Source: Octopus sinensis (Eukaryota). Taken from it: a stretch of DNA of 64,000 nucleotides. Where the stretch lies: assembly GCF_006345805.1 (NCBI RefSeq), contig NC_043010.1:52266001-52330000 (forward strand). Direction: 5' to 3'. Under the pieces are notes generated by a model. It did not search any database, had not been told where the DNA came from, and saw only the letters and a list, made by a program, of their open reading frames with translations. Positions 3,569-61,642 of the stretch are shown one piece after another. Both the position numbers and the translations under genes were made by a program. Position 1 is the stretch's first letter. Every line of letters begins with the position of its first letter.

Positions 3569-3570
3569 TT

Positions 3571-4423: not shown

Positions 4424-4429
4424 CGCCTG

Positions 4430-5193: not shown

Positions 5194-5257
<64 letters not shown>

Positions 5258-6558: not shown

Positions 6559-6611
6559 TTTCGAAGCAACGAAAATTTTGCAAAAATAAATAAGTAAATA
6601 AGTAAATAGAC

Positions 6612-33623: not shown

Positions 33624-33818
33624 AGTTCAAACCGGTTCAAACTGGTTCAAACCGGTTCAAACTGGTTCAAATCTATAAATAGTATCTATAAATAGAATCT
33701 ATAAATAGAATCTATAAATAGAATCTATAAATAGAATCTATAAATAGAATCTATAAATAGAATCTATAAATAGTACCTATAAATAGAATCTATAAATAGA
33801 ATCTATAAATAGAATCTA

Positions 33819-33854
<36 letters not shown>

Positions 33855-35080
33855 AGAATCTATAATTAGAATCTATAAATAGAATCTATAAAAAGAATCT
33901 ATAAATAGAATCTATAAATAGTATCTATAAATAGAATCTATAAATAGAATCTATAAATAAATAAATAAATAAATAAATAAATAGAATCTATAAATAGAAT
34001 CTATAAATAGAATCTATAAATAGAATCTATAAATAGTATCTATCAATGGAATCTATAAATAGAATCTATAAATAGAATCTATAAATAAATAAATAAATAA
34101 ATAGAATCTATAAATAGAATCTACAAATAGAATCTATAAATAGAATCTATAAATAGAATCTATAAATAGAATCTATAAAAAAATAAATAAATAAATAAAT
34201 AAATAGAATCTATAAATAGAGTCTGTAAATAGAATCTATAAAGAGAACCTATAAATAGTATCTACAAATAGAATCTATAAATAGAATCTATAAATAGTAT
34301 CTATAAATAGAATCTATATATAGAATCTATAAATAGTACCTATAAACAGAATCTATAAATAGAATCTATAAATAGAATCTATAAATAAATAAATAAATAA
34401 ATAAAAAATAAATAAATAAATAGAATCTATTATTCTATAAATAGAATCTATGAATAGAATCTATTTATGGACACTATTTATTTATTTATTTCTTTATTTA
34501 TTTATTTCAAACTGGTTCAAACCGGTTCATACCGTTCAAACCGGATCAAACCAGTTCAAACACTTTCATCAAACGTTTTTCATTAGACATTTTCATCAAA
34601 CATTTTTCATCGGACATATTCATCAGACATTTTCATCAAAAATTTTCATCAAACATTTTCATCAAACATTTTCATCAGACATTTTGATCCGGTTTGAACC
34701 GGTTTTATTCGATTTGTACCAGTTTCATCCGGTTTAAACCGTATCAAACCAATTCAAACTGGTTCAAGCCGGTTCAAACCGGATCAAACCAATTCGAACC
34801 GGTTCAAACCGGGTCAAACCAGTTCAAACCGGTTCAAACTGGTTCAAAACGATTCAAACTGGTTCAAATCTATAAATAGTATCTATAAATAGAATCTATA
34901 AATAGAATCTATAAATAGAATCTATAAATAGAATCTATAAATAGTATCTATAAATAGAATCTATATATAGAATCTATAAATAGTACCTATAAATAGAATC
35001 TATAAATAGAATCTATAAATACAATCTACACATAGAATCTATAAATAGAATCTATAAATAGAATCTATAAATAGAATCTA

Positions 35081-35111
<31 letters not shown>

Positions 35112-35983
35112 CTAGTATCTATAAATAGAGTCTGTAAATAGAATCTATAAATAGAATCTATAAATAGAATCTACAAATAGAATCTATAAATAGAATCTAT
35201 AAATAGTATCTATAAATAGAATCTATAAATAGAATCTATATATAGAATCTATAAATAAATAAATAAATGAATAAATAAATAAATAAATAAATAGAATCTA
35301 TAAATAGAATCTATAAATAGAATCTATTTATAGATACTATTTATTTATTTATTTATTTATTTATAGATTCTATTTATAGATTCTATAAATAGATTCTATT
35401 TATAGATTCTATAAATAGAATCTATGAATAGAATCTATTTATGGACACTATATATTTATTTATTTATTTATTTATTTATTTCAAACTGGTTCAAACCGGA
35501 TCAAACCAGTTCAAACACTTTCATCAAACGTTTTTCATTAGACATTTTCATCAAACATTTTTCATCAGACATATTCATCAGACATTTTCATCAAAAATTT
35601 TCATCAAACACTTTCATCAAACATTTTCATCAGACATTTTGATCCGGTTTGAACCGGTTTTATTCGATTTGTACCAGTTTGGTCCGGTTTAAACCGTATC
35701 AAACCAATTCAAACTGGTTCAAGCCGGTTCAAACCGGATCAAACCAATTCAAACCGGTTCAAACAGGGTCAAACCAGTTCAAACCGGTTCAAACTGGTTC
35801 AAAACGATTCAAACTGGTTCAAATCTATAAATAGTATCTATAAATAGAATCTATAAATAGAATCTATAAATGGAATCTATAAAAAGAATCTATAAATAGA
35901 ATCTATAAATAGAATGTATAAATAGAATCTATAAATAGTATCTATAAATAGAATCTATAAATAGAATCTATAAATAGAATCTA

Positions 35984-36014
<31 letters not shown>

Positions 36015-36299
36015 ATAGAATCTATAAATAGAATCCATAAAGAGAATCTATAAATAGAATCTATAAATAGAATCTATAAATAGAATCTATAAATTGAATC
36101 TATAAATAAATAAATAAATAAATAGTATCTATAAATAGAATCTATAAATAGAATCTATAAATAGAATCTAACAATAAATAAATAAATGAATAAATAAATA
36201 AATATATAAATAAATAAATAGAATCTATAAATGGAATCTATAAATAGAATCTATAAATAGAATCTATAAATAAATAAATAAATAAATAAATAGTATCTA

Positions 36300-36467
36300 G
36301 CAGGGGTGGCTGTGTGGTAAGTAGCTTGCTAACCCACCACATGGTTCCGGGTTCAGTCCCACTGCGTGGCATCTTGGGCAACTGTCTTCTGCTATAGCCC
36401 CGGGCCGACCAATGCCTTGTGAGTGGATTTGGTAGACGGAAACTGAAAGAATCCTGTCCTATATATG

Positions 36468-36498
<31 letters not shown>

Positions 36499-36721
36499 TT
36501 GTGTGTCTGTGTTTGTTCCCCTAGCATTGCTTGACAACCGATGCTGGTGTGTTTACGTCCCCGTCACTTAGCGGTTTGGCAAAAAGAGACCGATAGAATA
36601 AGTACTGGGCTTACAAAAAGAATGAGTCCCGGGGTCGAGTTGCTCGACTAAAAGGCGGTGCTCCAGCATGGCCGCAGTCAAAATGACTGAAACAAGTAAA
36701 AGAGTAAAGAGAGTAAAAGAG
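36300..36721 (+). mobile_element. Full-length SINE family 1 inserted in satellite B
   Basis: tatcta|gcaggggtggctgtgtggtaag...gagtaaaagag|taaatagaatc. Confidence 0.92.
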
Positions 36722-36865
36722 TAAATAGAATCAATAAATAGAATCTATAAATAGAACCTATAAATAGAATCTATAAATAGTCGCTATAAATAGAAGCTAT
36801 AAATAAAAGCTATAAAATAGAAGCTATAAATAGAAGCAACAAATAGAATCTATAAATAGAATCTA

Positions 36866-36908
<43 letters not shown>

Positions 36909-37093
36909 ATAGAATCTATAAATAGAATCTATAAATAGAATCTACAAATAGAATCTATAAATAGAATCTATAAATAGAATCTATAAATAGAATCTATAAT
37001 TAGAATCTATAAATAAATAAATAAATAAATAAATAAATATATAAATAGAACCTATAAATAGAGTCTGTAAATAGAATCTATAAATAGAATCTA

Positions 37094-37136
<43 letters not shown>

Positions 37137-39218
37137 ATAGAATCTATAAATAGAATCTATTTATAGATACTATTTATTTATTTATTTATTTATTTATGTA
37201 TAGATTCTATTTATAGATTCTATTTATAGATTCTATTTATAGATTCTATTTATAGATTCTATTTATAGATTCTATTTATAGATTCTGTTTATAGATTCTA
37301 TAAATAGAATCTATAAATAGAATCTATTTATAGATACTATTTATTTATTTATTTATTTATATATTTAGTTATCGATTCTATTTATAGATTCTATTTATAG
37401 ATACTATATATAGATTCTATTTATAGATTCTATTTATAGATTCTATTCATTTATTTATTTATTTATTCATTTATTTATAGATTCTATTATAGATTCTATT
37501 TATAGATTCTATTTATAGATACTATTTATAGATTCTATTTATAGATTCTATTTATAGATACTATATATAGATTTGAACCAGTTTGAACCGGTTTGAAATG
37601 GTTTGACCCGGTTTGAACTGGTTTGATCCGGCTTGAACCGGTTTGAATTGGGTAGATCCGGTTTGAACCAATTCAAAACGGTTCAAACTGGTTCAAACCA
37701 GTTCAAACCGGATCAAACCAGTTCAGACACTTTCATCAAACACTTTCATCAACCGTTTTTCATTGGACATTTTCATCAAAGATTTTTCATCAGACATATT
37801 CATCAGACATTTTCCTCAAAAATTTTCATTAAAACATTTTCATCAAACATTTTCATCAGACATTTTGATCCGGTTTGAACCGGGTTTATTCGATTTGTAC
37901 CGGTTTGGTCCGGGTTAAACCGTATGAAACCAATTCAAACCAGTTCAAACCGGTTCAAACTGGTTCAAATCTATAAATAGTATCTATAAATAGAATCTAT
38001 AAATAGAATCTATAAATAGAATCTATAAAAAGAATCTATAAATAGAATCTATAAATAGAATCTATAAATAGTATCTATAAATAGAATCTATAAATAGAAT
38101 CTATAATAGAATCAATAAATAAATAAATAATAAATAAATAAATAGAATCTATAAATAGAATCCATAATAGAATCTTAAAATAGAATCTATAATAGAATCT
38201 ATAAATAAAATAAATAAATAAATAGTATTTATAAATAGAATCTATAAATAGAATCTATAAATAGAATCTATAAATAGAATCTATAAATAGAATCTATAAA
38301 TAAATAAATAAATGAATAAATAAATAAATATATAAATAAATAAATTGAATCTATAAATGGAATCTATAAATAGAATCTATAAATAGTAGCTATAAATAGA
38401 AGCTATAAATAAAAGCTATAAAATAGAAGCTATAAATAGAAGCAATAAATAGAGACTATAAATAGAATCTATAAATAATTAAATAAATAAATAAATAAAT
38501 AAATAGAATCTATAAATAGAATCTATAAATAGAATCTATAAATAATATCTATAAATAGAATCTATAAATAGAATCTATAAATAGAATCTATAAATAAATA
38601 AATAAATAAATATATAAATAAATAAATAGAATCTATAAATAGAATCTATAAATTGAATCAATAAATAGAATCAATAAATAGAATCTATAATAAATGAATA
38701 AATGAATAAATAAATAAATATATAAATAAATAAATAGAATCTATAAATAGAATCTATAAATTGAATCTATAAATAGAATCTAAAATAAATAAATAAATGA
38801 ATAAATAAATAAAAATAAATAAATAAATAGAATCTAAAAATGGAATCTATAAATAGAATCTATAAATAGAATCTATATATAAATAAATAAATAAATAAAT
38901 AGTATCTATAAATAGAATCGATAAATAGAATCTATAAATAGAATCTATAAATAGAATCTATAAATAGAATCTATAAATAGTAGGTATAAATAGAAGCTAT
39001 AAATAAAAGCTATAAATAGAAGCTATAATAGAAGCAATAAATAGAATCTATAAATAGAATATATAAATAAATAAATAAATAAATAAATAAATAGAATCTA
39101 TAAATAGTATCTATAAATAGAATCTATAAAAAGAATCTATAAATAGAATCTATAATAGAATCTATAAATAGTATCTATAAATAGAATCTATAAATAGATC
39201 TATAAATAGAATCAATAA

Positions 39219-39249
<31 letters not shown>

Positions 39250-40036
39250 ATAGAATCTATAAATAGATCTATAAATAGAATCTTAAAATAGAGTCTATAA
39301 ATAGAATCTATAAATAAATAAATAAATAAATAGTATTTATAAATAGAATCTATAAATAAATAAATAAATGAATAAATAAATAAATATATAAATCAATAAA
39401 TAGAATCTATAAATAAAATCTATAAATAGTAGCTATAAATAGAAGCTATAAATAAAAGCTATAAAATAGAAGCTATAAATAGAAGCAATAAATAGAATCT
39501 ATAAATAGAATCTATAAATAATTAAATAAATAAATAAATAAATAAATAGAATCTATAAATAGAATCTATAAATAGAATCTATAAATAATATCTATAAATA
39601 GAATCTATAAATAGAATCTATAAATAAATAAATAAATAAATAAATAAATATATATATAAATAAATAAATAGAATCTATAAATAGTATCTATAAATAGAAT
39701 CTATAAATAGAATCTATAAATAGAATCTATAAATAAATAAATAAATAAATAAATAAATAGAATCTATAAATAGAATCCATAAAGAGAATCTATAAATAGA
39801 ATCTATAAATAGAATCTATAAATAGAATCTATAAATTGAATCTATAAATAAATAAATAAATAAATAGTATCTATAAATAGAATCTATAAATAGAATCTAT
39901 AAATAGAATCTAACAATAAATAAATAAATGAATAAATAAATAAATATAAAAATAAATAAATAGAATCTATAATGGAATCTATAAATAGAATCTATAAATA
40001 GAATCTATAAATAAATAAATAAATAAATAGTATCTA

Positions 40037-40453
40037 GCAGGGGTGGCTGTGTGGTAAGTAGCTTGCTAACCCACCACATGGTTCCGGGTTCATCCCACTG
40101 CGTGGCATCTTGGGCAACGTCTTCTGCTATAGCCCCGGGCCGACCAATGCCTTGTGAGTGGATTTGGTAGACGGAAACTGAAAGAAGCCTGTCCTATATA
40201 TGTATATATATATATATATGTGTGTTGTGTTTGTGTGTCTGTGTTTGTTCCCCTAGCATTGCTTGACAACCGATGCTGGTGTGTTTACGTCCCCGTCACT
40301 TAGCGGTTTGGCAAAAAGAGACCGATAGAATAAGTACTGGGCTTACAAAAAGAATGAGTCCCGGGGTCGAGTTGCTCGACTAAAAGGCGGTGCTCCAGCA
40401 TGGCCGCAGTCAAAATGACTGAAACAAGTAAAAGAGTAAAGAGAGTAAAAGAG
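40037..40453 (+). mobile_element. Duplicate of the 36300 SINE, same insertion junctions
   Basis: Identical flanks and diagnostic variants (caggggtgg, gctaacccaccac, ttacaaaaagaatgagt, agtcaaaatgac); 3737 bp downstream. Confidence 0.92.
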
Positions 40454-40741
40454 TAAATAGAATCTATAAATAGAATCTATAAATAGAACCTATAAATAGA
40501 ATCTATAAATAGTCGCTATAAATAGAAGCTATAAATAAAAGCTATAAATAGAAGCTATAAATAGAAGCAACAAATAGAATCTATAAATAGAATCTATAAT
40601 AAATAAATAAATAAATATAAATAAATAAATAAATAAATAAATAGAATCTATAAATAGAATCTATAAATAGAATCTACAAATAGAATCTATAAATAGAATC
40701 TATAAATAGAATCTATAAATAGAATCTATAATTAGAATCTA

Positions 40742-40772
<31 letters not shown>

Positions 40773-43340
40773 ATAGAATCTATAAATAGAATCTATAAAT
40801 AGAATCTATTTATAGATACTATTTATTTATTTATTTATTTATTTATTTATAGATTCTATTTATAGATTCTATTTATAGATTCTATTTATAGATTCTATTT
40901 ATAGATTCTATTTATAGATTCTGTTTATAGATTCTATAAATAGAATCTATAAATAGAATCTATTTATAGATACTATTTATTTATTTATTTATTTATATAT
41001 TTAGTTATCGATTCTATTTATAGATTCTATTTATAGATACTATATATAGATTCTATTTATAGATTCTATTTATAGATTCTATTCATTTATTTATTTATTT
41101 ATTCATTTATTTATAGATTTATTATAGATTCTATTTATAGATTCTATTTATAGATACTATTTATAGATTCTATTTATAGATTCTATTTATAGATACTATA
41201 TATAGATTTGAACCAGTTTGAACTGGTTTGAAATGGTTTGACCCGGTTTGAACTGGTTTGATCCGGTTTGAACCGGTTTGAATTGGGTAGATCCGGTTTG
41301 AACCAATTCAAAACGGTTCAAACTGGTTCAAACCAGTTCAAACCGGATCAAACCAGTTCAGACACTTTCATCAAACACTTTCATCAAACGTTTTTCATTG
41401 GACATTTTCATCAAAGATTTTTCATCAGACATATTCATCAGACATTTTCCTCAAAAATTTTCATTAAAACATTTTCATCAAACATTTTCATCAGACATTT
41501 TGATCCGGTTTGAACCGGTTTTATTCGATTTGTACCGGTTTGGTCCGGGTTAAACCGTATGAAACCAATTCAAACAGTTCAAACCGGTTCAAACTGGTTC
41601 AAATCTATAAATAGTATCTATAAATAGAATCTATAAATAGAATCTATAAATAGAATCTATAAAAAGAATCTATAAATAGAATCTATAAATAGAATCTATA
41701 AATAGAATCAATAAATAAATAAATAAATAAATAAATAAATAGAATCTATAAATAGAATCCATAAATAGAATCTTAAAATAGAATCTATAAATAGAATCTA
41801 TAAATAAATAAATAAATAAATAGTATTTATAAATAGAATCTATAAATAGAATCTATAAATAGAATCTATAAATAGAATCTATAAATAGAATCTATAAATA
41901 GAATCTATAAATAAATAAATAAATGAATAAATAAATAAATATATAAATAAATAAATATAATCTATAAATGGAATCTATAAATAGAATCTATAAATAGTAG
42001 CTATAAATAGAAGCTATAAATAAAAGCTATAAAATAGAAGCTATAAATAGAAGCAATAAATAGAGACTATAAATAGAATCTATAAATAATTAAATAAATA
42101 AATATAAATAAATAAATAGAATCTATAATATAATCTATAAATAGAATCTATAATAATATCTATAAATAGAATCTATAAATAGAAACTATAAATAGAATCT
42201 ATAAATAAATAAATAAAAAATAAATAAATATATAAATAATAAATAGAATCTATAAATAGAATCTATAAATGAATCAATAAATAGAATCAATAAATAGAAT
42301 CTATAAATAAATGAATAATATGAATAAATAATAAATATATATATAAATAAATAGAATCTATAAATAGAATCTATAATTGAATCTATAAATAGAATCTATA
42401 AATAAATAAATAAATGAATAAATAAATAAAAATATAAATAAATAAATAGAATCTAAAAATGGAATCTATAAATAGAATCTATAAATAGAATCTATAAATA
42501 AATAAATAAATAAATAAATAGTATCTATAAATAGAATCTATAAATAGAATCTATAAATAGAATCTATAAATAGAATCTATAAATAGAATCTATAAATGGA
42601 ATCTATAAATAGTAGGTATAAATAGAAGCTATAAATAAAAGCTATAAAATAGAAGCTATAAATAGAAGCAATAAATAGAATCTATAAATAGAATATATAA
42701 ATAAATAAATAAATAAATAAATAAATAGAATCTATAAATAGTATCTATAAATAGAATCTATAAAAAGAATCTATAAATAGAATCTATAAATAGAATCTAT
42801 AAATAGTATCTATAAATAGAATCTATAAATAGAATCTATAAATAGAATCAATAAATAAATAAATAAATAAATAAATAAATAGAATCTATAAATAGAATCC
42901 ATAAATAGAATCTTAAAATAGAATCTATAAATAGAATCTATAAATAAATAAATAAATAAATAGTATTTATAAATAGAATCTATAAATAAAATCTATAAAT
43001 AGAATCTATAAATAGAATCTATAAATAGAATCTATAATAGAATCTATAAATAAATAAATAAATGAATAAATAAATAAATATATAAATCAATAAATAGAAT
43101 CTATAAATAAAATCTATATATAGTAGCTATAAATAGAAGCTATAAATAAAAGCTATAAAATAGAAGCTATAAATAGAAGCAATAAATAGAATCTATAAAT
43201 AGAATCTATAAATAATTAAATAAATAAATAAATAAACAAATAGAATCTATACATAGAATCTATAAATAGAATCTATAAATAGAATCTATAAATAATATCT
43301 ATAAATAGAATCTATAAATAGAATCTATAAATAGAATCTA

Positions 43341-43375
<35 letters not shown>

Positions 43376-45416
43376 ATATATATATAAATAAATAAATAGA
43401 ATCTATAAATAGAATCTATAAATTGAATCAATAAATAGAATCAATAAATAGAATCTATAAATAAATGAATAAATGAATAAATAAATAAATATATAAATAA
43501 ATAAATAGAATCTATAAATAGAATCTATAAATTGAATCTATAAATAGAATCTATAAATAGAATCTATAAATAAATAAATAAATGAATAAATAAATAAAAA
43601 TATAAATAAATATATAGAATCTAAAAATGGAATCTATAAATAGATTATCGATTCTCTTTATAGATTCTATTTATAGATTCTATTTATAGATTCTATTTAT
43701 TTATTTATTTATTTATTTATATATAGATTCTATTTATAGATTCTATTTATTGATTCTATTTATAGACACTATTTATAGATTTGAACCAGTTTGAACCGGT
43801 TTGAACCAGTTTGAACCGGTTTGAACTGGTTTGAACCAGTTTGAACTGGTTTGATACGGTTTAAACGGGACCAAACTGGTACGAATCGAATAAAACCGGT
43901 TCAAACCGGATCAAAATGTGTAATGAAAAATTTTTGATGAAAGTGTTTGATGAAAGTATTTGAACTGGTTTGATCCGGTTTGAACCGGTTTGAACCGGTT
44001 TGAATCAGTTTGAACCGTTTTAAATTGGTTAGATCCTGTTTGAATCAATTCAAAACAGTTCAAACCGGTTCAAACAGGATCAAACCAGTTCAGACACTTT
44101 CATCAAACTCTTTCATCAAACGTTTTTCATTAGACATTTTCATCAAACATTTTTCATCGAACATTTTCATCAGACATTTTCATCAAAAATTTTCATCAAA
44201 CATTTTCATCAAACATTTTCATCAAACATTTTCATCAGACATTTTGATCCGGTTTGAACCGGTTTTATTCGACTTGTACCGGTTTGGTCCGGTTTAAACC
44301 GTATCAAATCAGTTCAAACTGGTTCAAACCGGCTCGAACCGGATGAAACCAGTTCAGACCGATTCAAACCGGGGCAAACCAGTTCAAACCAGTTCAAAGT
44401 GGTTCAAACCGGTTCAAACGGGTTCAAATCTATAAATAGTATCTATAAATAGAATCTATAAATAGAATCTATAAATAGAATCTATAAATAGAATCTATAA
44501 ATAGTATCTTTAAATAGAATCTATAAATAGAATCTATAAATAGAATCTATAAATAGAATCTATGAATAGAATCTAAAAATAGAATCTATAAATAAATAAA
44601 TAAATAAATAAATAAATAGTATCTATAAATAGAATCTATAAATAGAATCTATAAATAGAATCTATAAATAAATAAATAAATAAATAAATAAAAAAAAAAT
44701 AAATAATTAAATAGAATCTATAAATAGAATCTATAAATAGAATCTATAAAAAGAATCTATAAATAGAATCTATAAATAGAATCTATAAATAAAATCTATG
44801 AATAGAATCTATAAATAGAATCTATAAATAAAAAAATAAATAAATAGTATCTATAAATAGAATCTATAAATAGAATCTATAAATAGAATCTATAAATAGA
44901 ATCTATAAATAGTATCTATAAATAGAATCTATAAATAGAATCTATAAATAGAATCTATAAATAAATAAATAAATAAATAAATATTATCTATAAATAGAAT
45001 CTATGAATAGAATCTATAAATAGAATCTATAAATAAATAAATAAATAAATAAATATTATCTATAAATAGAATCTATGAATAGAATCTATAAATAGAATCT
45101 ATAAATAGAATCTATAAATAGAATCTATGAATAGAATCTATAAATAAATAAATAAATAAATAGTATCTATAAATAGAATCTATAAATAGAATCTATAAAT
45201 AGAATCTATAAATAAATAAAAAAATAAATAAATAATAAATAAATAATAGTATCTATAAATAGAATCTATAAATAGAATCTATAAATAGAATGTATAAATA
45301 ATATCTATAAATAGAATCTATAAATAGAAGCTATAAATAGAAGCTATAAATAGAAGCTATAAAGAGAAGCTATAAATAGATGCTTTAAATAGAAGCTATA
45401 AATAGAAGCTATAAAT

Positions 45417-45544
45417 ATTGAACATTCCATAGTGGGGGATTTAATGGTGAAGGGGAGGAATGGGTAGAAGGAATATTGAACATTCCAGACAGGGGTATTT
45501 CAAGGTAAAGGGGAGGAATGGGAAGAAGGAATATTGAACATTCC
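45417..45544 (+). repeat. Satellite A island (about 2 monomers) inside the composite array
   Basis: gctataaat|attgaacattccatagtggggg...gaacattcc|atagagttcagacctgatc. Confidence 0.9.
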
Positions 45545-46644
45545 ATAGAGTTCAGACCTGATCAAACCAGTACAAACCGGTTCAAACTGGTTCAAACTGT
45601 TCAAACCGGTTAAAACCGGAACAAACCAGTTCAAACACTTTCCTCAAACACTTTCATCAAACATTTTTCATCCGACATTTTCATCAAACATTAAACCGGT
45701 TCAAACCGGCTCAAACCAGATCAACCACATCAAACAAGTTCAAACTGGATCTAACCAATTCAAAACGGTTCAAACTGGTTCAAACCGATTCAAACCGGTT
45801 CAAACTGGATCAAACCAGTTCAAACACTTTCATCAAACACTTTCATCAAACGTTTTTCATCAGACATTTTCCTCAGACATTTTCATCAAAAATTTTAATC
45901 AAACATTTTCATCAAACATTTTCATCAAACATTTTCATCATACATTTTGATCCGGTTTGAACCGGTTTTATTCGATTTGTACCGGTTTGGTCCAGTTTAA
46001 ACCATATCAAACCAATTCAAACTGGTTCAAACCGGTTCGAACCGGTTCAAACCAGTTCAAACCGGTTCAAACCGCTTCAAACTGGTTCAAATCTATAAAT
46101 AGCATCTGTAAATAGAATCTATAAATAGAATCTATAAATAGAATCTATAAATAGTATCTATAAATAGAATCTATATATAGAATCTATAAATAATAAATAA
46201 ATAATAAATATTATCTATAAATAGAATCTATGAATAGAATCTATAAATAGAATCTATAAATAAATAAATAAATAAATAAATAATAGTATCTATAAATAGA
46301 ATCTATGAATAGAATCTATAAATAGAATCTATAAATAGAATCTATAAATAGAATCTATGAATAGAATCTATAAATAAATAAATAAATAAATAGTATCTAT
46401 AAATAGAATCTATAAATAGAATCTATAAATAGAATCTATAAATAAATAAAAAAATAAATAAATAAATAAATAAATAGAATCTATAAATAGAATCTATAAA
46501 TAGAATCTATAAATAGAATGTATAAATAATATCTATAAATAGAATCTATAAATAGAAGCTATAAATAGAAGCTATAAATAGAAGCTATAAAGAGAAGCTA
46601 TAAATAGATGCTTTAAATAGAAGCTATAAATAGAAGCTATAAAT

Positions 46645-46772
46645 ATTGAACATTCCATAGTGGGGGATTTAATGGTGAAGGGGAGGAATGGGTAGAAGGA
46701 ATATTGAACATTCCAGACAGGGGTATTTCAAGGTAAAGGGGAGGAATGGGAAGAAGGAATATTGAACATTCC
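46645..46772 (+). repeat. Satellite A island, duplicate of 45417 (1228-bp period)
   Basis: Identical sequence and junctions. Confidence 0.9.
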
Positions 46773-47413
46773 ATAGAGTTCAGACCTGATCAAACCAGTA
46801 CAAACCGGTTCAAACTGGTTCAAACTGTTCAAACCGGTTAAAACCGGAACAAACCAGTTCAAACACTTTCCTCAAACACTTTCATCAAACATTTTTCATC
46901 CGACATTTTCATCAAACATTAAACCGGTTCAAACCGGCTCAAACCAGATCAACCACATCAAACAAGTTCAAACTGGATCTAACCAATTCAAAACGGTTCA
47001 AACTGGTTCAAACCGATTCAAACCGGTTCAAACTGGATCAAACCAGTTCAAACACTTTCATCAAACACTTTCATCAAACGTTTTTCATCAGACATTTTCT
47101 CAGACATTTTCATCAAAAATTTTAATCAAACATTTTCATCAAACATTTTCATCAAACATTTTCATCATACATTTTGATCCGGTTTGAACCGGTTTTATTC
47201 GATTTGTACCGGTTTGGTCCAGTTTAAACCATATCAAACCAATTCAAACTGGTTCAAACCGGTTCGAACCGGTTCAAACCAGTTCAAACCGGTTCAAACC
47301 GCTTCAAACTGGTTCAAATCTATAAATAGCATCTGTAAATAGAATCTATAAATAGAATCTATAAATAGAATCTATAAATAGTATCTATAAATAGAATCTA
47401 TATATAGAATCTA

Positions 47414-47453
<40 letters not shown>

Positions 47454-48164
47454 ATCTATAAATAGAATCTATAATAGAATCTATGAATAGAATCTATAAA
47501 TAGAATCTATAAATAGAATCTATAAATAGAATCTATAAATAGAATCTATAAATAAATAAATAAATAAATAAATAGTATCTATAAATAGAATCAATAAATA
47601 GAATATATAAATAAATAAATAAATAAATAAATAGTATCTATAAACAGAATCTATAAATAGAATCTATAAATAGAATCTATAAATAGAATCTATAAATAGA
47701 ATCTATAAATAGAATCTATAAATAGTGTCTATAAATAGAATCTATAAATAGAATCTATAAATAAATAAATAAATAAATAAATAAAGAGTATCTATAAATA
47801 GAATCAATAAATAGAATCTATAAATAGAATCTATAAATAGAATCTATAAATAGTATCTATAAATAGAGTCTATAAATAGAATCTATATATAGAATCTATA
47901 AATAAATAAATAAATAAATAAATAGAATCTATAAATAGAATCTATAAATAGAATCTATAAATAAATAAATAAATAAATAAATAGAATCTATAAATAGGAT
48001 CTATAAATAGTAGCTATAAATAGAAGCTATAAACAGAAGCTATAAACAGAAGCTATAAATAGAAGCTATAAATAGAAGCTATAAAGAGAAGCTATAAATA
48101 GAAGCTATAAATAGAAGCTATAAATAGAAGCTATAAAGAGAAGCTATAAATAGAAGCTATAAAT

Positions 48165-48523
48165 ATTGAACATTCCAGAGAGGGGATTTGAAGGTAAAGT
48201 GGAGGAATTGGAAGAAGGAATATTGAACATTTCAGAGAGGGGGATTTGAAGGTGAAGGGGAGAAATGGGAAGAAGGAATATTCAACATTCCAGAGAGGGG
48301 GATTTCAAAGTGAAGAGGAGGAATGGGTAGATGGAATATTGAACATTCCAGAGAGGGGGATTTTAAGGTGAAGGGTAGGAATGGGAAGAAGGAATATTGA
48401 ACATTCCAGAAAGGGTGATTTGACGGTAAAGGGGAGGAATGGGAACAAGGAATATCTAACATTCCAGAGAGGGGTATTTGAAGGTAAAGGGTAGGAATGG
48501 GAAGAAGGAATATTGAACATTCC
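48165..48523 (+). repeat. Satellite A island (about 6 monomers) with the same entry and exit junctions
   Basis: gctataaat|attgaacattcc ... gaacattcc|atagagttcagacctgatc. Confidence 0.9.
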
Positions 48524-51012
48524 ATAGAGTTCAGACCTGATCAAACCAGTTCAAACCGGTTTAAACTGGTTCAAACTGTTCAAACCGGTTCAAACCGGAT
48601 CAAACCAGTTCAAACACTTTCATCAAACACTTTCATCAAACATTTTTCATCAGACATTTTCATCAGACATTTTCATCAAACATTAAACCGGTTCAAACCG
48701 GCTTAAACCGGATCAACCACATCAAACAAGTTCAAACCGGATCTAACCAATTCAAAACGGTTCAAACTCGTTCAAACTGGTTCAAACCGGATCAAACCAG
48801 TTCAAACACTTTCATCAAACATTTTTCATTAGACATTTTCATGAAACATTTTTCATCAGAAATTTTCATCAGACATTTTCATCAGACATTTTGATCCGGT
48901 TTTAACCTGTTTTATTCGATTTGTACCGGTTTGGTCCGGTTTGAACCGTATCAAACCAGTCCAAACTGGTACAAGCCGGATCAAACCGGATCAAACCAGT
49001 TCAAACCGGTTCAAACCGGGTCAAACCAGTTCAAACCGGTTCAAACTAGTTCAAACCGGTTCAAACAGGTTCAAACCGGTTCAAACCGGATCAAACCAGT
49101 TCAAACCAGTTCAAACACTTTCATCAAACATTTTCCCCAAACATTTTCATCAAACATTTTCATCAAACGTTTATCACCAAAAATTTATCAACAAACATTT
49201 TCATCAAACATTTTCATAAAACATTTTCATCAGACATTTTGATCCGGTTTGAACCTGTTTTATTCGATTTGTACCGGTTTGGTCCGGTTTGAACCGTATC
49301 AAACCAGTTCAAACTGGTTCAAACCGGTTCAAACCGGATCAAACCAGTTCAAACCGGTTCAAACTGGTTCAAGCCGGTTCAAACCAGATCAGATCCAGTT
49401 CAAAGTGGTTCAAACTGGTTCAAACTGGTTCAAAACGGTTCAAACTGGTTCAAACAAGATCAAACCAGATCAAACTAGTTCAAACACATTCATCAAACAC
49501 TTTCATCAAACATTTTTCATCAGACATTTTCATCAGACATTTTAATCAGACATTTTCATCAGTAATTTTCATCAGACATTTTCATCAAACATTTTCATGA
49601 AACATTTTCATCAGACATTTTGATACGGTTTGAACCGGTTTGAACCGCATCAAACAAGTTCAAACTGGTTCAAACCGGTTCAAACCGCATCAAACCAGTT
49701 CAAACCGGATCAAACCGGGTCAAACTAGTTCAAACCGGTTCAAATTAGTTCAAACAGGTTCAAACTGGATCAAACCAGATCAAACCAGTTCAAACACTTT
49801 CATCAAACACTTTCATCAAACATTTTTCATTAGACATTTTCATGAAACATTTTCGGCAAACATTTTTCATCAAACATTTTCATCAGACATTTTGATCCGG
49901 TTTGAACCGGTTTTATTCGATTTGTACCGGTTTGAACCAGTTTGAACTGGTTTGAATTGGTTTGACCAGGTTTGAACTTGTCTGATCTGGTTGATCCGGT
50001 TTGAGCCGGTTTGAACCGGTTTAATGTTTGATGAAAATATCTGATGAAAATGTCTGATGAAAAATGTTTGATGAATGTGTTTCATGAAAGTGTTTGAACT
50101 GGTTTTATCCGGTTTGAACCGGTTTGAACCAGTTTGAACCAGTTTGAACTGGTTTGATCTGGTCTGAACCGGTTTTAAACTGTTTGATCCGGTCTGAACT
50201 TGGTTTGAACCGGTTTAAAACGGTTTTTTATTCGGTTTGTACCGGTTTGGTCCGGTTTGAATCGGTTTGAACTGGACCGATCAAACATTTATCCTCATTT
50301 ATCATCAAACATTTATCATCAAACACTTTTCATTGTCATCAAACATTTATCATCAAAAGTTTTCATTAAACATTGTCACCAAACATTTTCATCAAACATT
50401 TTCATCAAACGTTTATCATCAAACATTTATCAACAAACATTTTCATATGACAATTATCATGAAACTTTATCATCACACATTTTCATGAAACATTTTTCAT
50501 CAAACATGTATATCAAACATTTTCATCAAACATTTACCTCAAACATTTATCAACAAACATTTTCATCAAACGTTTATCATCAAACATTTATCAACAAACA
50601 TTTTCATTAGACAATTATCATGAAACATTTATCTTCAAACATTTTCATCAAACATTTATCATCAAACATTTATCATCAAACATTTTCATAAAACATTTTT
50701 CATCAAACATTTTCATCAAACATTTTCATCAAACATTTACATCAAACATTTTCATCAATCATTTCATCAAACATTTTCATCAGACATTTTCATCAAACAA
50801 TTTTGAAAGTTTTGGTCAAACCGGTTTAAACCGGATCAAACCGGATCAAATTGGTTTGACCCTGTCTCGTTCGGTGCGGTTTGAACAGATTTGATCCGGT
50901 TTTAACCGGTTTGAAGCGGTTTGAACCAGTTTCAACCGGTTTGATGCGGTTTGAACTGGTTTGATCCGGTTTGAACCGGTTTTATCCGGTTTGAACTGGT
51001 TTGATTCGCATC

Positions 51013-51893
51013 GAACATTCCAGAGAGGGGGATTTGAGGAGTGAAGGGGAGGAAGGGGTGGAAGGTTTGTAGAACATTCCAGAAAGGGGGATTTGAGAGG
51101 TGGAGAGGAGAAATGGCGAGAAAGGAATATTGAACATTCCGGAGAGGGGGATTTGAGGTGTGAAGGGGAGGAAGGGGAGGAAGGAATGTTGAAAATTCCA
51201 GAGAGGGGGATTTGAGATGTGAAGGGCAGGAAGGGGGGAAAGGAATGTTGAACATTCCACAGAGGGGGATTTGAGGGGTGAAGGGGAGGAAGGAATGTTG
51301 AACATTCCTTAGAGGGGGAATTCAGGTGTGAAGTGAAGGAAGGAATATTGAATATTCCAGAGAGGGGGATTTTTGAGATGAAGGGGAGGAAGGGGAGGAG
51401 GGAATGTTGAACATTCCAGAGGGGGGATATGAGGGGTGAAGGAGAGGAAGGGGAGGAAGGAATATTGAACATTCCTGAGAGGGGGATTTTGAGAGGTAAA
51501 GGGGAGGAAGGGGAGGAAGGAATGTTGAACATTCCACAGAGAGGGATTTCAGGGGTGAAGGGGAGGAAGGGGAGGAAGGAATGTTGAACATTCCAGTGAG
51601 GGGATTTGAGGGGTGAAACGGAGGAAGGAATATTGAACATTCCAGAGAGGTGGATTTGAGAGGTGAAGAAGAGGAAGGGGAGGAAGGAATGTTGAACATT
51701 CCAGAGAGGGGGATTTGAGGGGTGAAGAGGAGAAACGGGAGGAAGGAATATTGAACATTCCAGAGAGGGGTTTTTGAGGGGTGAAGCGGTGGAAGGGGAG
51801 GAAGGAAAATAAAACATTCCAGAGAGGGGGATTTGAGAGGTGAAGGTGAGGAAGGAATATTGAACATTCCAGAGAGGGGGATTTGAGAGGTGA
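51013..51893 (+). repeat. Satellite A' subfamily island 1
   Basis: Frequent GGAATGTTGAACATTCC core and GATTTGAG(G/A)GGTGAA spacer, distinct from the main array. Confidence 0.9.
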
Positions 51894-52240
51894 AACATTT
51901 TCATCAAACGTTTATCATCAAACATTTATCAACAAACATTTTCATAAAACATTTTTCATTAAACACTTTCATCAAGCATTTTCATCAAACATTTTCATCA
52001 GACATTTTCATCAAACAATTTTGAATGTTTTGGTGAAACCGTTTTAGACCGGATCAAACCGGATCAAACTGGTTTCACCCTGTCTGGTTCGGTCCGGTTT
52101 CAACAGGTTTGATCCGGTTTGAAGCGGTTTGAACCGGTTTGAACCAGTTTGAACCGGTTTGAACCGGTTTGATGCGGTTTGAACTGGTTTGATCCGGTTT
52201 GAGCAAGTTTTATCCGGTTTGAACTGGTTTGAACCGCATC

Positions 52241-52915
52241 GAATATTCCAGAGGGGGTATTTCAGGGGTGAAGGAGAGGAAGGAATATTGAACATTCCAG
52301 AGAGGGGGATTTGAGAGATGAAGGGGAGGAAGGGGAGGAAGGAATTTTTAACATTCCAGAGAGGGGGATATGAGGGGGTGAAGGAGAGGAAGGGGAGGAA
52401 GGAATGTTGAACATTCCAGAGAGGTGGATTTGAAAGGTAAAGGGGAGGAAGGGGAGGAAGGAATGTTGAACATTCCAGAGAGGTGGATTTGAAAGGTAAA
52501 GGGGAGGAAGGGGAGGAAGGAATGTTGAACATTCCACAGAGGGGGATTTGAGGGGTGAAGGGGAGGAAGGGGCGGAAGGAATATTGAACATTCCAGAGAG
52601 GGGGATTTGGGAGATGAAGGGGAGGAACGGGAGGAAGGAATGTTGAACATTCCAGAGAGGGTGATATGAGGGGTGAAGGAGAGGAAGGGGAGGAAGGAAT
52701 ATTGAACATTCCAGAGAGGGGGATTTGAGAAATGAAGCGGAGGAAGGGGAGGAAGGAATGTTGAACATTCCACAGAGGGGGGTTTGATGGCTGAAGGGGA
52801 GGAAGGGGAGGATGTAATGTTGAACATTCCAGAGGGGGGATTTGAGGGGTGAACAGGAGGAAGGGGAGGAAGGAATGTTGAACATTCCAGAGAGGGGGAT
52901 TTGAGAGGGGGATTT
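52241..52915 (+). repeat. Satellite A' subfamily island 2
   Basis: Same diagnostic variants; the upstream D-C junction repeats at a 1218-bp offset (50798/52016). Confidence 0.9.
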
Positions 52916-53880: not shown

Positions 53881-56800
53881 CAGTTCAAACACTTTCATCA
53901 AACACTTTCATCAAACATTTATCATCAAACATGTATCATCAAACATTTTCATCAAATATTTTCATCAAACATTTTCATCAAACATTTTCATCAAACATTT
54001 ATCATCAAACATTTTCATCAAACATTTTCATCAAACATTTACACCAAACATTTTCAGGAAACATCTTAATCAAACATTTTCATCAAACGTTTTCAGCAAA
54101 CATTTTCATCAAACTTTTATCATCAAACATTTATCAACAAACATTTTCATTAAACATTTATCATCAAACATTTTCATCGAACATTTTCATCAAACATTTA
54201 CATCAAACATTTTCATCTAACATCTTAATCAAACATTTTCATCAAACATTTTCATCAAACAACTTAATCAAACATTTTCATCAAACATTATCATCAAACA
54301 TCTTAAACAAACATTTTCATCAAACATTATCATCAAACATCTTAAACAAACATTTTCATCAAACATTTTCACCACATATTTTCATCCAAACACTTTCATC
54401 AAACATTTTCATCAAACATTTTTCATTAAACACTTTCATCAAACATTTTCATCAAACATTTTTCATTAAACATTTTCATCAAACATTTTCATCAAACATT
54501 TATCATTAAACAATTATCATCAAACATTTTCATCAAACATTTATCATCAAACATGTATCATGAAATATTTTTCATCAAACATTTATCATCATACATTTTT
54601 CAACATACATTTTCATCAAACATTTTCACCAAACATTTTCATCAAACACTTTCATCAAACATTTATCATCAAACATTTATCATTAAACATTTATCATCAA
54701 ACTTTTATCATCAAACATTTTCATCAAACATTTATCATCAAACATTTTTCATCAAACATTTATCATCAACGTTTTCATTAAACATTTTTCATCAAACACT
54801 TTTCATCATCAAACATTTTCATCAAACGTTTATCATCAAACGTTTTCATCAAACATTTTCATCAAACATTTATCATCAAACATTTTCATCAAACATTTAT
54901 CATCAAACATTTTTATCAAACATTTTTCATCACAACACTTTCATCAAACATTTTCATCAAACTTTTATCATCAAATATTTATCAACAAACATTTATCATC
55001 AAACATTTATCATCAAACATTTTCATCAAACATTTTCATCAAACATTTATCATCAAACATGTATCATCAAACATTCTTCATAAAACATTTTCATCAAACA
55101 CTTTCATCAAAGATTTATTATCAAACACTTTCATCAAACGTTTATCAACAAACATTTATCATCAAACATTTATCATCAAACATTTTCATCAAACATTTTC
55201 ATCAAACATTTATCATCAAACATGTATCATCAAACATTTTTCATCAATCATTTATCATCAAACATTTATCATCAAACATTTATCGTCATTTATCATCAAA
55301 CATGTATCATCAAACATTTTTCATCAAACATTTTCATCAAACACTTTCATCAAACATTTTCATCAAACATTTTCATCAAACATTTATCATCAAACATGTA
55401 TCATCAAACATTTTTCATTAAACATTTTCATCAAACACTTTCATCAAACATTTTCATCAAACGTTTTCATTAAACATTTTCACCAAACATTTTCATCAAA
55501 CATTTTCATCAAACCTTTATCTTCAAACAGTTGTCAACAAACATTTTCATCAAACATTTATCATCAAACATTTTCATCAAACATTTATCATCAAACATTT
55601 TCATCAAACATTTTCATCAAACATTTACATCAAACATTTTCATCAAACATTTTCATCAAACATCTTAATCAAACATTTTCCTCAAACATCTTAATCAAAC
55701 ATTTTCATCAATCATTTATCATCAAACATTTATCATCAAACATTTATCGTCATTTATCATCAAACATTTATCATCAAACACTTTTCATCAAACATTTTCA
55801 TCAAACATTTATCATTAAACATTTTCATCAAATATTTGTTATCAAACATTTTCACCAAACATTTTCATCAAACATTTTCATCAAACGTTTTAATCAAACA
55901 TTTATCATTAAACATTTATCATCAAACATTTATCAACAAACATTTTCGTCAAACATTTATCATCAAACATTTTTCATCAAACATTTATCATCAAACGTTT
56001 TCATTAAACATTTTCACCAAACATTTCCATCAAACTTTTTCATCAAACGTTTATCATCAAACGTTTTCATCAAACATTTTCATCAAACATTTATCATCAA
56101 ACATTTTCATCAAACATTTATCATCAAACATTTTTATCAAACATTTTCATCACAACACTTTCATCAAACATTTTCATCAAACGTTTATCAACAAATATTT
56201 ATCAACAAACATTTATCATCAAACATTTATCATCAAACATTTTCATCAAACATTTTCATCAAACATTTATCATCAAACATGTATCATCAAACATTCTTCA
56301 TAAAACATTTTCATCAAACACTTTTATCAAAGATTTATTATCAAACACTTTCATCAAACGTTTATCAACAAACATTTATCATCAAACATTTTCATCAAAC
56401 ATTTTCATCAAACATTTATCATCAAACATGTATCATCAAACATTTATCGTCATTTATCATCAAACATGTATCATCAAACATTTTTCATCAAACATTTTCA
56501 TCAAACACTTTCATCAAACATTTTCATCAAACATTTTCATCAAACATTTATCATCAAACATGTATCATCAAACATTTTTCATTAAACATTTTCATCAAAC
56601 ACTTTCATCAAACATTTTCATCAAACATTTCATCAAACGTTTTCATTAAAATTTTCACCAAACATTTTCATCAAACATTTTCATCAAACCTTTATCTTCA
56701 AACAGTTATCAACAAACATTTTCATCAAACATTTACATCAAACATTTTCATCAAACATTTTCATCAAACATCTTAATCAAACATTTTCCTCAAACATCTT

Positions 56801-61466: not shown

Positions 61467-61642
61467 ACGCGATAATCGAGGGATTACTGTAATGGTGATA
61501 CTTTAAAAACAAATAATTAATTCAATTCAATTAAAAAGCATGGGTAAGCTATAATTTGCGAAAAAAAATTATCTGCGCGCAGGGTATGCATCACCCCTCC
61601 AATGTGCGTGTGTGTTATTTGTTGAGACATTCAATATGAAAC

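What the first reader, a model, noticed from the sequence alone, without database searches (positions are those of the whole stretch)
33671..48164. Satellite B is a tandem array of perfect MEF2 sites
Seen: the 13-mer AAT-CTATAAATAG. Common variants alter the 3-nt spacer (GTAT, AAGCT) or stay within (A/T)4 (CTATATATAG, CTATAATTAG, CTAAAAATAG), although motif-breaking variants also occur (CTATGAATAG, CTACAAATAG, CTATAAAGAG). Knowledge: the MEF2 consensus is YTA(A/T)4TAR, which is 64 of 4^10 decamers (~6e-5 at uniform composition, higher in AT-rich DNA). The unit also contains TATAAA. Several hundred sites are present.
Basis: partly seen in the sequence, partly recalled or inferred. Interest (0 to 1): 0.7.

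Follow-up and report, generated by a model that had tools for sequence, protein, structure and literature searches.

The report
AT-rich 13-bp satellite matching MEF2 motif
A 14.5-kb stretch really does carry about 475 copies of a sequence matching the MEF2 binding motif, but they are copies of one amplified 13-base unit in an ordinary composite satellite, and their mutations show no sign of selection to keep the motif.

Summary
YTAWWWWTAR occurs 482 times in the window, 475 of them inside 33671-48164. That compares with about 21 in whole-window shuffles and about 36 in local Markov-1 simulations. 397 sites fit the strict CTA(A/T)4TAG.

The region is not one homogeneous array. It is about ten blocks of the 13-mer AATCTATAAATAG, some inverted, broken every few units by (ATAA)n slippage runs. 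Recurrent modules of two other short repeats, three short stretches of the 58-mer satellite and two SINE copies separate the blocks. All were amplified together as 1-3.7-kb modules with identical junctions. The hundreds of sites are therefore effectively one observation. A random tandem 13-mer of this composition carries the motif 3-5% of the time.

Motif-preserving changes are 18-28% of core substitutions, against 17-20% expected. The four invariant T/A positions vary as much as the four W positions. About 22% of units have a broken motif.

Best reading: a neutrally evolving composite satellite whose MEF2/TATA match is incidental. In-vivo binding could not be tested. No related sequence from another species could be found.

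The parts
33625..33671 (+). Short GTTCAAACCG (T10) array linking the 58-mer satellite to the first B13 block. The junction is CTGGTTCAAA|TCTATAAATAG.
   Evidence: TRF. The junction sequence is identical at 33660, 34860, 37960 and 46085.
33670..34464 (+). B13 block 1: AATCTATAAATAG, 62.5 copies, 86% matches, interrupted by (ATAA)n runs.
34465..34868 (.). Spacer module: a short inverted B13 stretch with (TATT)n, then T10, TCAAACATTTTCA (C13, 10 copies), inverted T10 and T10.
34867..35438 (+). B13 block 2, 43.5 copies. Its 3' end turns into inverted units.
35439..35823 (.). Spacer module (TATT)n/T10/C13/T10. It is a paralogue of 34465-34868.
35822..36284 (+). B13 block 3, 35.9 copies.
36284..36722 (+). 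Copy of a dispersed SINE-like element inserted inside one B13 unit (TATCTA|SINE|TAAATAG), splitting a MEF2 core.
   Evidence: 91% identical to 6586-7029 and 90% to 62777-63166. Flanks read.
36722..37573 (.). B13 block 4. It runs + up to about 37150, then inverted (ATAGATTCTATTT) to 37573. The flip is at ...AATAGAATCTATTTATAG...
37572..37969 (.). Spacer module: inverted T10, T10, C13, T10.
37968..40029 (+). B13/(ATAA)n block 5, about 2 kb, 12.6% G+C, heavily invaded by ATAA runs.
40030..40454 (+). Second SINE copy, 98.5% identical to 36284-36722. It was copied with the 3.7-kb segmental duplication.
40454..41207 (.). B13 block, + then inverted. It is a paralogue of 36722-37573.
41207..41601 (.). 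Spacer module T10/C13. It is a paralogue of 37572-37969.
41602..43781 (.). B13/(ATAA)n block, about 2 kb, a paralogue of 37968-40029. It ends in inverted units at 43659-43781.
43780..44440 (.). Spacer module of T10 and C13 arrays in both orientations.
44440..45417 (+). B13 block with (ATAA)n runs.
45414..46091 (+). 2.4 copies of the 58-mer satellite followed by T10/C13/T10/C13/T10. The B13-to-58-mer junction is AAGCTATAAATA|TTGAACATTCC.
46090..46645 (+). B13 block, 42.9 copies.
46642..47318 (+). Paralogue of 45414-46091, part of the 1.23-kb duplication 44861-46645 / 46090-47891. That pair is 95% identical by blastn and 97.4% over the ungapped columns of a global alignment.
47317..48165 (+). 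Last B13 block, 67.9 copies. It abuts 6.4 copies of the 58-mer at 48162-48529.

Best explanation
Satellite B is one member of a 50-kb composite satellite cluster (7881-58280) and evolves by the usual mechanics of tandem DNA. It is not a selected battery of MEF2 sites.

**Proposed history**
1. An AT-rich, nearly palindromic 13-bp unit (TCTATAAATAGA + A) was amplified by replication slippage and unequal exchange.
2. Its own TAAATA stretch repeatedly seeded (ATAA)n microsatellite runs.
3. Its near-palindromy allowed strand switching, which flipped parts of the array into the inverse orientation.
4. Single junction events at short microhomologies joined it to the neighbouring 10-mer, 13-mer and 58-mer satellites.
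5. The resulting 1-3.7-kb modules, including one SINE that had landed inside a unit, were then duplicated several times.

The core equals CTA(A/T)4TAG, and also contains the TATA-like TATAAATA. This is an incidental property of that one founder 13-mer. MEF2, TBP or AT-hook proteins may well bind it in vitro, but the sequence shows no evidence of being kept for that.

**Shown:** the architecture, the module duplication, the shared junctions, the SINE insertion and the neutral pattern of substitutions.

**Inferred:** the slippage and strand-switch mechanisms, the heterochromatic or neutral status, and the animal (probably cephalopod) origin.
For: **Architecture**
- TRF and the k-mer map show about ten B13 blocks of 0.4-2 kb. 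They are separated by T10/C13/58-mer modules of roughly 380-670 bp and two SINE copies of about 440 bp.
- The token map records about 60 (ATAA)n runs of three or more repeats among the units.
- 44 of the 68 CTATAAATAA sites run straight on into ATAA repeats.

**Module amplification**
- 35822-39989 matches 39576-43644, 44861-46645 matches 46090-47891, and 33870-35334 matches 34867-36261.
- These pairs are 87-95% identical by blastn and 95-99% identical over the ungapped columns of a global alignment.
- The T10-to-B13 junction is letter-identical at four places, the B13-to-58-mer junction at three, and the orientation flip at two.
- The commonest variant, TAT for AAT, sits at fixed places: the second unit of a block and the first unit after an ATAA run. 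It is therefore inherited, not recurrent.

**SINE**
- It splits one unit exactly (TATCTA|SINE|TAAATAG). It was then copied at 98.5% identity.

**Substitution tests**
- Preserving fractions are 28%, 18% and 26%, against 17-20% neutral.
- Invariant positions vary as much as the W positions, and there is no W-to-W enrichment at the W positions.
- 22% of units are broken.

**Neighbouring satellites and structure**
- T10 and C13 show the same mixture of hot and cold positions without any motif being invoked.
- Five units of single-stranded B13 fold at -9.3 kcal/mol, z = -3.9. Long inverted arms of 140-217 nt at 75-94% complementarity lie within the region.

**Prior chance**
- A tandem 13-mer of this composition carries the motif in 2.9-5.2% of random draws.
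Against: - The 3-nt spacer is more variable than the 10-bp core. The rates are 0.080 against about 0.033 per site in sandwiched units. In paralogue differences the split is 29 against 61 events, p=0.045. This is the direction expected if something constrains the core.
- B13 units are also more homogeneous (4.4% non-consensus per site) than C13 (7.7%) or T10 (15%) under the same sampling.
- Selection on single units of a redundant array would be weak. Homogenisation blurs the count of events. A neutral substitution pattern therefore cannot exclude a function of the array as a whole.
- No binding, chromatin or expression data could be consulted, and no other species could be compared.
Confidence: 0.78

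Rival explanations
1. A functional MEF2 platform. The array is kept because MEF2 (MADS/MEF2 domain) dimers bind its hundreds of CTATAAATAG cores. It would act as a tissue-specific enhancer cluster, a promoter for satellite transcripts, or a sink that titrates MEF2.
For: - There are 397 strict-consensus sites.
- The consensus is conserved across eukaryotes (PMC3250504).
- The same decamer was identified as a MEF2 binding site in the human PRL-3 promoter (PMC3206935).
- The spacer is more variable than the core.
- Transcription-factor sites that work inside satellites have precedent: PAX3, PAX9 and FOXD3 on mouse major satellite, and HSF1 on human satellite III (PMC9324158).
Against: - Within the core the substitution pattern ignores MEF2 degeneracy.
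- 22% of units are broken.
- A SINE sits inside a core and was tolerated and duplicated.
- ATAA slippage freely destroys the unit phase.
- The sites are not independent.
- No gene-like ORF lies in the window: the 202-aa ORF translated from the left flank is low-complexity and looks non-coding, and the remaining long ORFs lie within repeats.
- Sites 13 bp apart centre to centre may not be occupiable side by side. This last point is an inference and was not tested.
Confidence: 0.06
2. A structural satellite bound by some other protein that reads the near-palindromic AT-rich core. Candidates are an AT-hook or HMG-type satellite binder, TBP, or a lineage-specific factor. Its role would be heterochromatin bundling or centromere-proximal organisation.
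For: - The core is less variable than the spacer.
- B13 is more homogeneous than the neighbouring satellites.
- The unit is a 5+5 inverted repeat around AA and contains TATAAATA (read directly from the sequence; fold).
- It sits in a 50-kb block of several satellites.
- From general knowledge rather than from a test here, AT-rich satellites in flies and mice are bound by D1, Prod and HMGA1.
Against: - The spacer excess is mostly two inherited variants, A1>T (38 of 40) and T3>G (14 of 20). Spacer position 2 varies like the core.
- T10 and C13 have similar hot and cold positions.
- No protein or localisation data exist.
Confidence: 0.1
3. Remnant of foldback-type or other transposable elements. 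In this reading the inverted arms are built of short tandem repeats, and the B13/T10/C13 modules are element copies rather than a classical satellite.
For: - Arrays flip orientation around T10/C13 cores, giving b-t-T-C-t-T-B arrangements.
- The region holds many inverted pairs of 140-217 nt.
- T10 shows periods of 10, 20 and 30 bp.
- The recurrent modules of 1-3.7 kb have identical junctions.
Against: - All copies are contiguous in one cluster. There are no dispersed copies in the 14 kb of non-satellite flanks.
- No target-site duplications or element ends were recognised.
- No coding remnant was found.
- Tandem segmental duplication explains the same facts.
Confidence: 0.06
4. Assembly artefact. 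The array, or its size and module order, was produced by mis-assembly of low-complexity reads.
For: A 100-N scaffold gap at 7779-7878 abuts the start of the satellite cluster. Long AT-rich arrays are hard to assemble.
Against: - Paralogous modules differ by 1-5% in substitutions plus indels. They are not identical collapsed or duplicated copies.
- The junctions are coherent.
- Array lengths may be wrong, but the existence of the repeat is not in doubt.
Confidence: 0.03

Closest known systems
Composite satellite DNA with higher-order or segmental structure, in which several short-unit families are interleaved and amplified as larger modules
   Same: - Head-to-tail copies of a short unit, in arrays of 0.4-2 kb within a 50-kb cluster.
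- Variants inherited with larger repeat modules.
- Microsatellite invasion and a retroelement insertion copied along with the array.
- Inversions within the arrays.
   Different: Genome-wide abundance, chromosomal position and species range are unknown here. As far as these searches show, this 13-mer family is undescribed: 50 papers contain the decamer, and none of the 20 listed concerns a satellite of this kind.
MEF2 sites of muscle and neuronal enhancers and promoters, CTA(A/T)4TAG
   Same: The 10-bp core is an exact strict-consensus site. The identical decamer was identified as a MEF2 binding site in the human PRL-3 promoter.
   Different: - The one documented case read here, the PRL-3 promoter, has two MEF2 sites within about 130 bp of a gene's promoter.
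- Here there are hundreds of sites at 13-bp spacing with no gene in 64 kb.
- There is no motif-shaped constraint, and a fifth of the units are broken.
Satellites that carry working transcription-factor sites: mouse major satellite with PAX3, PAX9 and FOXD3, and human satellite III with HSF1
   Same: A tandem unit contains a recognisable factor motif. If B13 were bound, it would be a further example of this known kind (PMC9324158).
   Different: Those cases rest on binding and expression experiments. Here there is only a motif match, and the test of constraint came out neutral.
AT-rich satellites of Drosophila and mouse bound by D1, Prod and HMGA1 (from general knowledge, not tested here)
   Same: A short AT-rich unit in long arrays. 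It is a plausible substrate for minor-groove or AT-hook binders.
   Different: No binder is known for B13, and the unit sequence is unrelated.
Foldback (FB-type) elements whose inverted arms are built of short tandem repeats (from general knowledge)
   Same: Inverted blocks of short tandem repeats flank a central segment, and the short repeat shows 10/20/30-bp periods.
   Different: No defined element ends, no target-site duplications and no dispersed copies were seen. The modules are tandem.

Membership tests
MEF2 binding site (sequence level) | Match to CTA(A/T)4TAG, or to the relaxed YTA(A/T)4TAR. | tested here: met
   There are 397 strict and 475 relaxed matches in 33671-48164. The consensus is as given in PMC3250504.
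Functional MEF2 cis-regulatory element | Substitutions are filtered according to the motif: invariant positions conserved, and W positions free to change only within A/T. | tested here: not met
   Preserving fractions are 18-28% against 17-20% neutral. Invariant positions vary at least as much as W positions. Fisher p is 0.37 for W-to-W enrichment.
Functional MEF2 cis-regulatory element | Occupancy by MEF2 in vivo and MEF2-dependent activity. | not testable with these tools
   This needs EMSA, ChIP or CUT&RUN, and reporter assays.
Functional MEF2 cis-regulatory element | Conservation of the sites at orthologous loci in related species. | not testable with these tools
   - No eukaryotic genome collection was available.
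- Exact B13 dimer or trimer scans found only one unrelated two-copy contig in metagenomes. They found nothing in the viral or prokaryotic collections.
- A protein-level search using an ORF from the adjacent 58-mer satellite found nothing.
Functional MEF2 cis-regulatory element | Placement near a regulated gene or promoter. | tested here: inconclusive
   The window has no gene-like ORF. The 202-aa ORF translated from the left flank (1382-1990) is low-complexity and looks non-coding, and the other long ORFs listed lie within repeats. Genes beyond the window are unknown.
Satellite / tandem-repeat DNA | Head-to-tail copies of a unit in arrays of hundreds of bases to kilobases. | tested here: met
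   TRF finds eight discrete 13-mer arrays of 34-68 copies at 82-86% matches. A further call spans 37968-45417, with 572 copies at 73%.
Satellite / tandem-repeat DNA | Variants spread with higher-order or segmental repeats (concerted amplification). | tested here: met
   Shown by the module duplications, the identical junctions and the fixed positions of the TAT variant.
Satellite / tandem-repeat DNA | High copy number in the genome and heterochromatic or (peri)centromeric location. | not testable with these tools
   Only this one window is available.
Foldback-type transposable element | Discrete element with terminal inverted arrays, target-site duplication and dispersed copies. | tested here: inconclusive
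   Inverted arrays are present. No element ends or target-site duplications were recognised, and there are no dispersed copies in the flanks of the window.

The most novel reading that the evidence does not exclude
B13 is a lineage-specific, very high-density binding platform for a MADS/MEF2 factor, or for TBP. The array as a whole, rather than each unit, would be used as a tissue-specific factor sink or as a promoter for satellite transcripts in muscle or nervous tissue. Homogenisation rather than per-site selection would keep the consensus intact.
Probability: 0.05. Interest if true: 0.6.

Novelty: new member of a known kind. Interest (0 to 1): 0.15.

Why it matters
It matters mainly as a caution. 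A short AT-rich, nearly palindromic satellite unit will often coincide with some transcription-factor consensus. Amplification then turns that single coincidence into hundreds of apparently perfect sites.

If MEF2 really did occupy such an array, it would join PAX3/PAX9 on major satellite and HSF1 on satellite III as a satellite read by a developmental factor. It could then matter for factor dosage in muscle and neurons. The sequence gives no positive sign of that.

The architecture itself is a tidy small example of how composite satellites are built. It shows founder junctions copied with modules, ATAA invasion from within the unit, orientation flips at the palindromic centre, and a SINE carried along by a duplication.

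Tried and rejected
- **Wraparound local alignment.** Aligning the region to the cyclic consensus ran through the whole region as one segment and could not delimit units. I replaced it with units sandwiched between good in-register neighbours.
- **Exact-pattern scans for B13.** The metagenome scan gave one 1.57-kb contig with two copies in otherwise unrelated, non-repetitive sequence that has no other similarity to the window. I judged it a chance match. The viral and prokaryotic genome scans gave nothing.
- **Protein search with an ORF read through the adjacent 58-mer satellite.** The aim was to reach other assemblies that carry this cluster. It gave no hit.
- **Rfam and ARAGORN on the whole window.** Neither found anything. 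The tRNA-derived origin of the SINE-like element therefore rests only on reading a B-box-like GGTTCAGTCC in it.
- **Literature search for printed SINE fragments.** It returned nothing, so the organism is not identified.
- **Literature search for MEF2 together with satellite DNA.** None of the listed titles or abstracts concerns MEF2 sites in a satellite. The papers were not opened.
- **The 202-aa ORF at 1382-1990.** Its translation is low-complexity and looks non-coding.
- **One literature query failed on term length.**


Full report
**1. The observation**

The region 33671-48164 does contain the 13-mer AATCTATAAATAG in large numbers. There are 247 exact copies in the window, 246 of them in the region. 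TRF puts the first array at 33670 and the end of the last at 48165.

The relaxed MEF2 pattern YTAWWWWTAR matches 482 times in the window. Dinucleotide-preserving shuffles of the window give 21.4 +/- 4.5. 475 matches fall in the region, where a first-order Markov model of that 79% A+T stretch gives 35.6 +/- 5.8. 397 matches fit the strict CTA(A/T)4TAG. There are essentially no matches elsewhere in the window.

**2. What the region is made of**

It is not one homogeneous array. A k-mer map and TRF show about ten B13 blocks of 0.4-2 kb. Several turn into the inverse orientation (ATAGATTCTATTT) at their 3' ends.

Recurrent modules separate the blocks. They are built of a 10-mer (GTTCAAACCG), another 13-mer (TCAAACATTTTCA) and, three times, a few copies of the 58-mer that fills 7881-33399.

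By exact 8-mers the region is 46% B13, 19% (ATAA)n, 8% T10, 5% C13, 1% 58-mer and 20% other.

The (ATAA)n runs start inside the unit, as CTATAAATAAATAA. 44 of the 68 CTATAAATAA 'sites' on the + strand are simply the start of such a run.

A token map of the region gives about 594 recognisable units:
- 246 consensus units
- 43 with the TAT spacer variant
- 48 with other spacer-only changes
- 127 with a changed but still matching core, which includes the ATAA starts and the inverted units
- 130 (22%) with a broken core

The whole satellite cluster runs from 7881 to 58280. It begins directly after a 100-N scaffold gap.

**3. The sites are not independent**

Large parts of the region are copies of each other:

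| Copy 1 | Copy 2 | blastn identity | Identity over ungapped aligned columns |
|---|---|---|---|
| 35822-39989 | 39576-43644 | 91% | 98.7% |
| 44861-46645 | 46090-47891 | 95% | 97.4% |
| 33870-35334 | 34867-36261 | 87% | 94.8% |

The junctions are letter-identical wherever they occur:
- T10 to B13 (CTGGTTCAAA|TCTATAAATAG) at four places
- B13 to 58-mer (AAGCTATAAATA|TTGAACATTCC) at three places
- the orientation flip (AATAGAATCTATTTATAGATAC) at two places

Each junction was therefore made once and then copied.

A 440-bp SINE-like dispersed element has at least eight full or partial copies in the window. One copy sits exactly inside a unit, as TATCTA|SINE|TAAATAG. It was duplicated with the 3.7-kb module, and the two copies are 98.5% identical.

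The commonest variant, TAT for AAT, is found at fixed places: the second unit of a block and the first unit after an ATAA run. It is inherited with the higher-order repeat and does not arise again and again.

**4.

Of the 30 possible single substitutions in CTATAAATAG, 6 keep YTAWWWWTAR. That is 20% under a uniform model, or 5 of 29 (17%) if G>A is left out.

I counted in three ways.

*(a) Units included only because both in-register neighbours are within one mismatch of the consensus, so the unit's own sequence does not decide its inclusion (n=286).*
- Non-consensus counts per position are [40, 9, 20 | 3, 13, 11, 12, 11, 11, 2, 14, 9, 8].
- In the core, 26 changes preserve the motif and 68 break it (28%, p=0.07 against 20%).
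- The invariant T5, A6, T11 and A12 change at 0.041 per site. The W positions change at 0.032 per site.
- W-to-W against W-to-S changes are 18:18 at the W positions and 29:18 at the invariant positions (Fisher p=0.37).

*(b) All decamers one step from the core, on both strands.*
- With the slippage product CTATAAATAA set aside, 19 are preserving and 85 are breaking (18%).
- The most frequent single changes include the breaking CAATAAATAG (18), CTATGAATAG (11) and CTATAAAAAG (7), alongside the preserving CTATATATAG (11).

*(c) Differences between the three pairs of paralogous modules, which are closer to independent, recent events.*
- There are 90 differences within B13 units, distributed per position as [15, 5, 9 | 8, 14, 2, 2, 5, 13, 0, 7, 7, 3].
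- In the core, 16 are preserving and 45 are breaking (26%, p=0.26).
- The invariant positions have 30 events and the W positions 20.

All three counts say that motif-breaking substitutions occur at about the neutral rate.

**5.

The spacer varies more than the core. The rates are 0.080 against about 0.033 per site in (a). In (c) the split is 29 against 61 events, p=0.045.

Most of this is two variants: A1>T (38 of 40 changes at position 1) and T3>G (14 of 20 at position 3). Spacer position 2 behaves like the core.

The neighbouring satellites T10 and C13 show the same mixture of hot and cold positions under the same sampling.

B13 is nevertheless the most homogeneous of the three, at 4.4% non-consensus per site against 7.7% and 15%.

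I take this as weak, non-specific evidence. It does not point to MEF2, because the pattern inside the core ignores the motif's degeneracy.

There is also a limit to the power of the test. In a redundant array selection on any one unit is weak, and homogenisation confounds the counts. A function of the array as a whole therefore cannot be excluded from sequence alone.

**6. Prior chance**

A random 13-mer repeated in tandem carries YTAWWWWTAR in the following share of draws:
- 0.08% at uniform composition
- 0.5% at 63% A+T
- 3.4% at 80% A+T
- 5.2% at the unit's own A+T content
- 2.9% in shuffles of its own letters

That is for one motif. Many other AT-rich consensus motifs are known (general knowledge). 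The same core is also a TATA-like TATAAATA. The neighbouring 58-mer contains CATTCC, which I recall as the core of the muscle M-CAT/TEAD site. That recollection is a lead from memory, not a test. A match of some unit to some factor is therefore unremarkable.

**7. Mechanism**

The unit is a 5+5 inverted repeat around AA (TCTAT-AA-ATAGA) plus one base. Five units of single-stranded DNA fold at -9.3 kcal/mol, against -3.6 +/- 1.5 for shuffles (z=-3.9). The region holds many inverted pairs of 140-217 nt at 75-94% complementarity.

This fits, by inference, strand switching at the palindromic centre as the origin of the inverted blocks. It also fits slippage at TAAATA as the origin of the ATAA runs.

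I conclude that B13 is an ordinary member of a composite satellite. It grew by slippage, unequal exchange and segmental duplication. Its MEF2 match is incidental.

**8. Comparison with what is known**

- The decamer is a bona fide MEF2 consensus (PMC3250504). It was identified as a MEF2 binding site in the human PRL-3 promoter (PMC3206935). In-vitro binding is therefore plausible.
- Satellites with working factor sites are a known kind: PAX3, PAX9 and FOXD3 on mouse major satellite, and HSF1 on human satellite III (PMC9324158).
- None of the listed hits from the search for MEF2 together with satellite DNA concerns MEF2 sites in a satellite, judging by titles and abstracts.
- None of the 20 listed papers, of the 50 containing CTATAAATAG, concerns a satellite of this kind.
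- No related sequence could be fetched from the available collections.
- The organism could not be identified with the tools.

**9. Verdict**

- Novelty is that of one more satellite family.
- Interest is low.

Noticed in passing
window 7779-7878: A run of 100 N (a scaffold gap) lies immediately before the start of the 25.5-kb 58-mer array at 7881. The left edge and true size of the satellite cluster are therefore not established by this assembly.
   Followed up: no
window 7881-33399, plus short blocks at 45414-45550, 46642-46778, 48162-48529 and 51013-52905: The 58-mer satellite (439 copies, 85% matches) has an extreme purine strand bias, with GC skew about +0.75. It contains the near-palindrome GGAATATTGAACATTCC. 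CATTCC is, from memory, the core of the M-CAT/TEAD site, so the same caution about motif matches in satellites applies.
   Followed up: partly
window 7759-33441, minus strand: Very long ORFs (up to 1226 aa) run through the 58-mer array because its pyrimidine-rich strand lacks stop codons. A protein search with one of them found no relatives. They are artefacts, not genes.
   Followed up: yes
T10 arrays, for example window 33625-33671, 34729-34868 and 48936-49116: In the GTTCAAACCG repeat the hot positions are the CpG. C9>T occurs 19 times and G10>A 32 times among 87 sampled units, giving alternating CCGG / CTGG / CCAG and 20- and 30-bp periods. This looks like CpG decay, which would suggest the array is or was methylated.
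   Followed up: partly
window 6586-7029, 36284-36722, 40030-40454 and 62777-63166. Partial copies: 3381-3569(-), 4093-4424(-), 5256-5505(-), 59525-59940 and 61308-61474.: A dispersed SINE-like element of about 440 bp. It has a tRNA-like head (B-box-like GGTTCAGTCC), an internal (TA)n/(TG)n stretch and an (AGTAAAAG)n tail. Rfam and ARAGORN do not recognise it. From memory it resembles the abundant octopus SINE. This was not verified.
   Followed up: partly
window 7335-7690: A 185-bp unit present 1.9 times in tandem (87% matches). It looks like part of a second SINE-like family (…CGACCCCGAAAGGATGAAAGGCAA…). A related stretch lies just upstream, at about 7160-7330.
   Followed up: no
window 53885-58280: A 4.4-kb array of TCAAACATTTTCA with a 13/27-bp period, 329 copies and GC skew about -0.89. 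It closes the satellite cluster. Unique sequence resumes at about 58281.
   Followed up: no
window 37150 and 40800. Inverted pairs such as 35900-36108 / 37247-37455.: B13 arrays switch orientation at the palindromic centre (…AATAGAATCTATTTATAG…). This creates long inverted repeats that could extrude as hairpins or cruciforms. The b-t-T-C-t-T-B arrangement recalls foldback elements.
   Followed up: partly
L001 571-596: The only match to a B13 dimer in the metagenome collection is a 1.57-kb contig with just two copies in otherwise unrelated, non-repetitive sequence. I judged it a chance match.
   Followed up: yes
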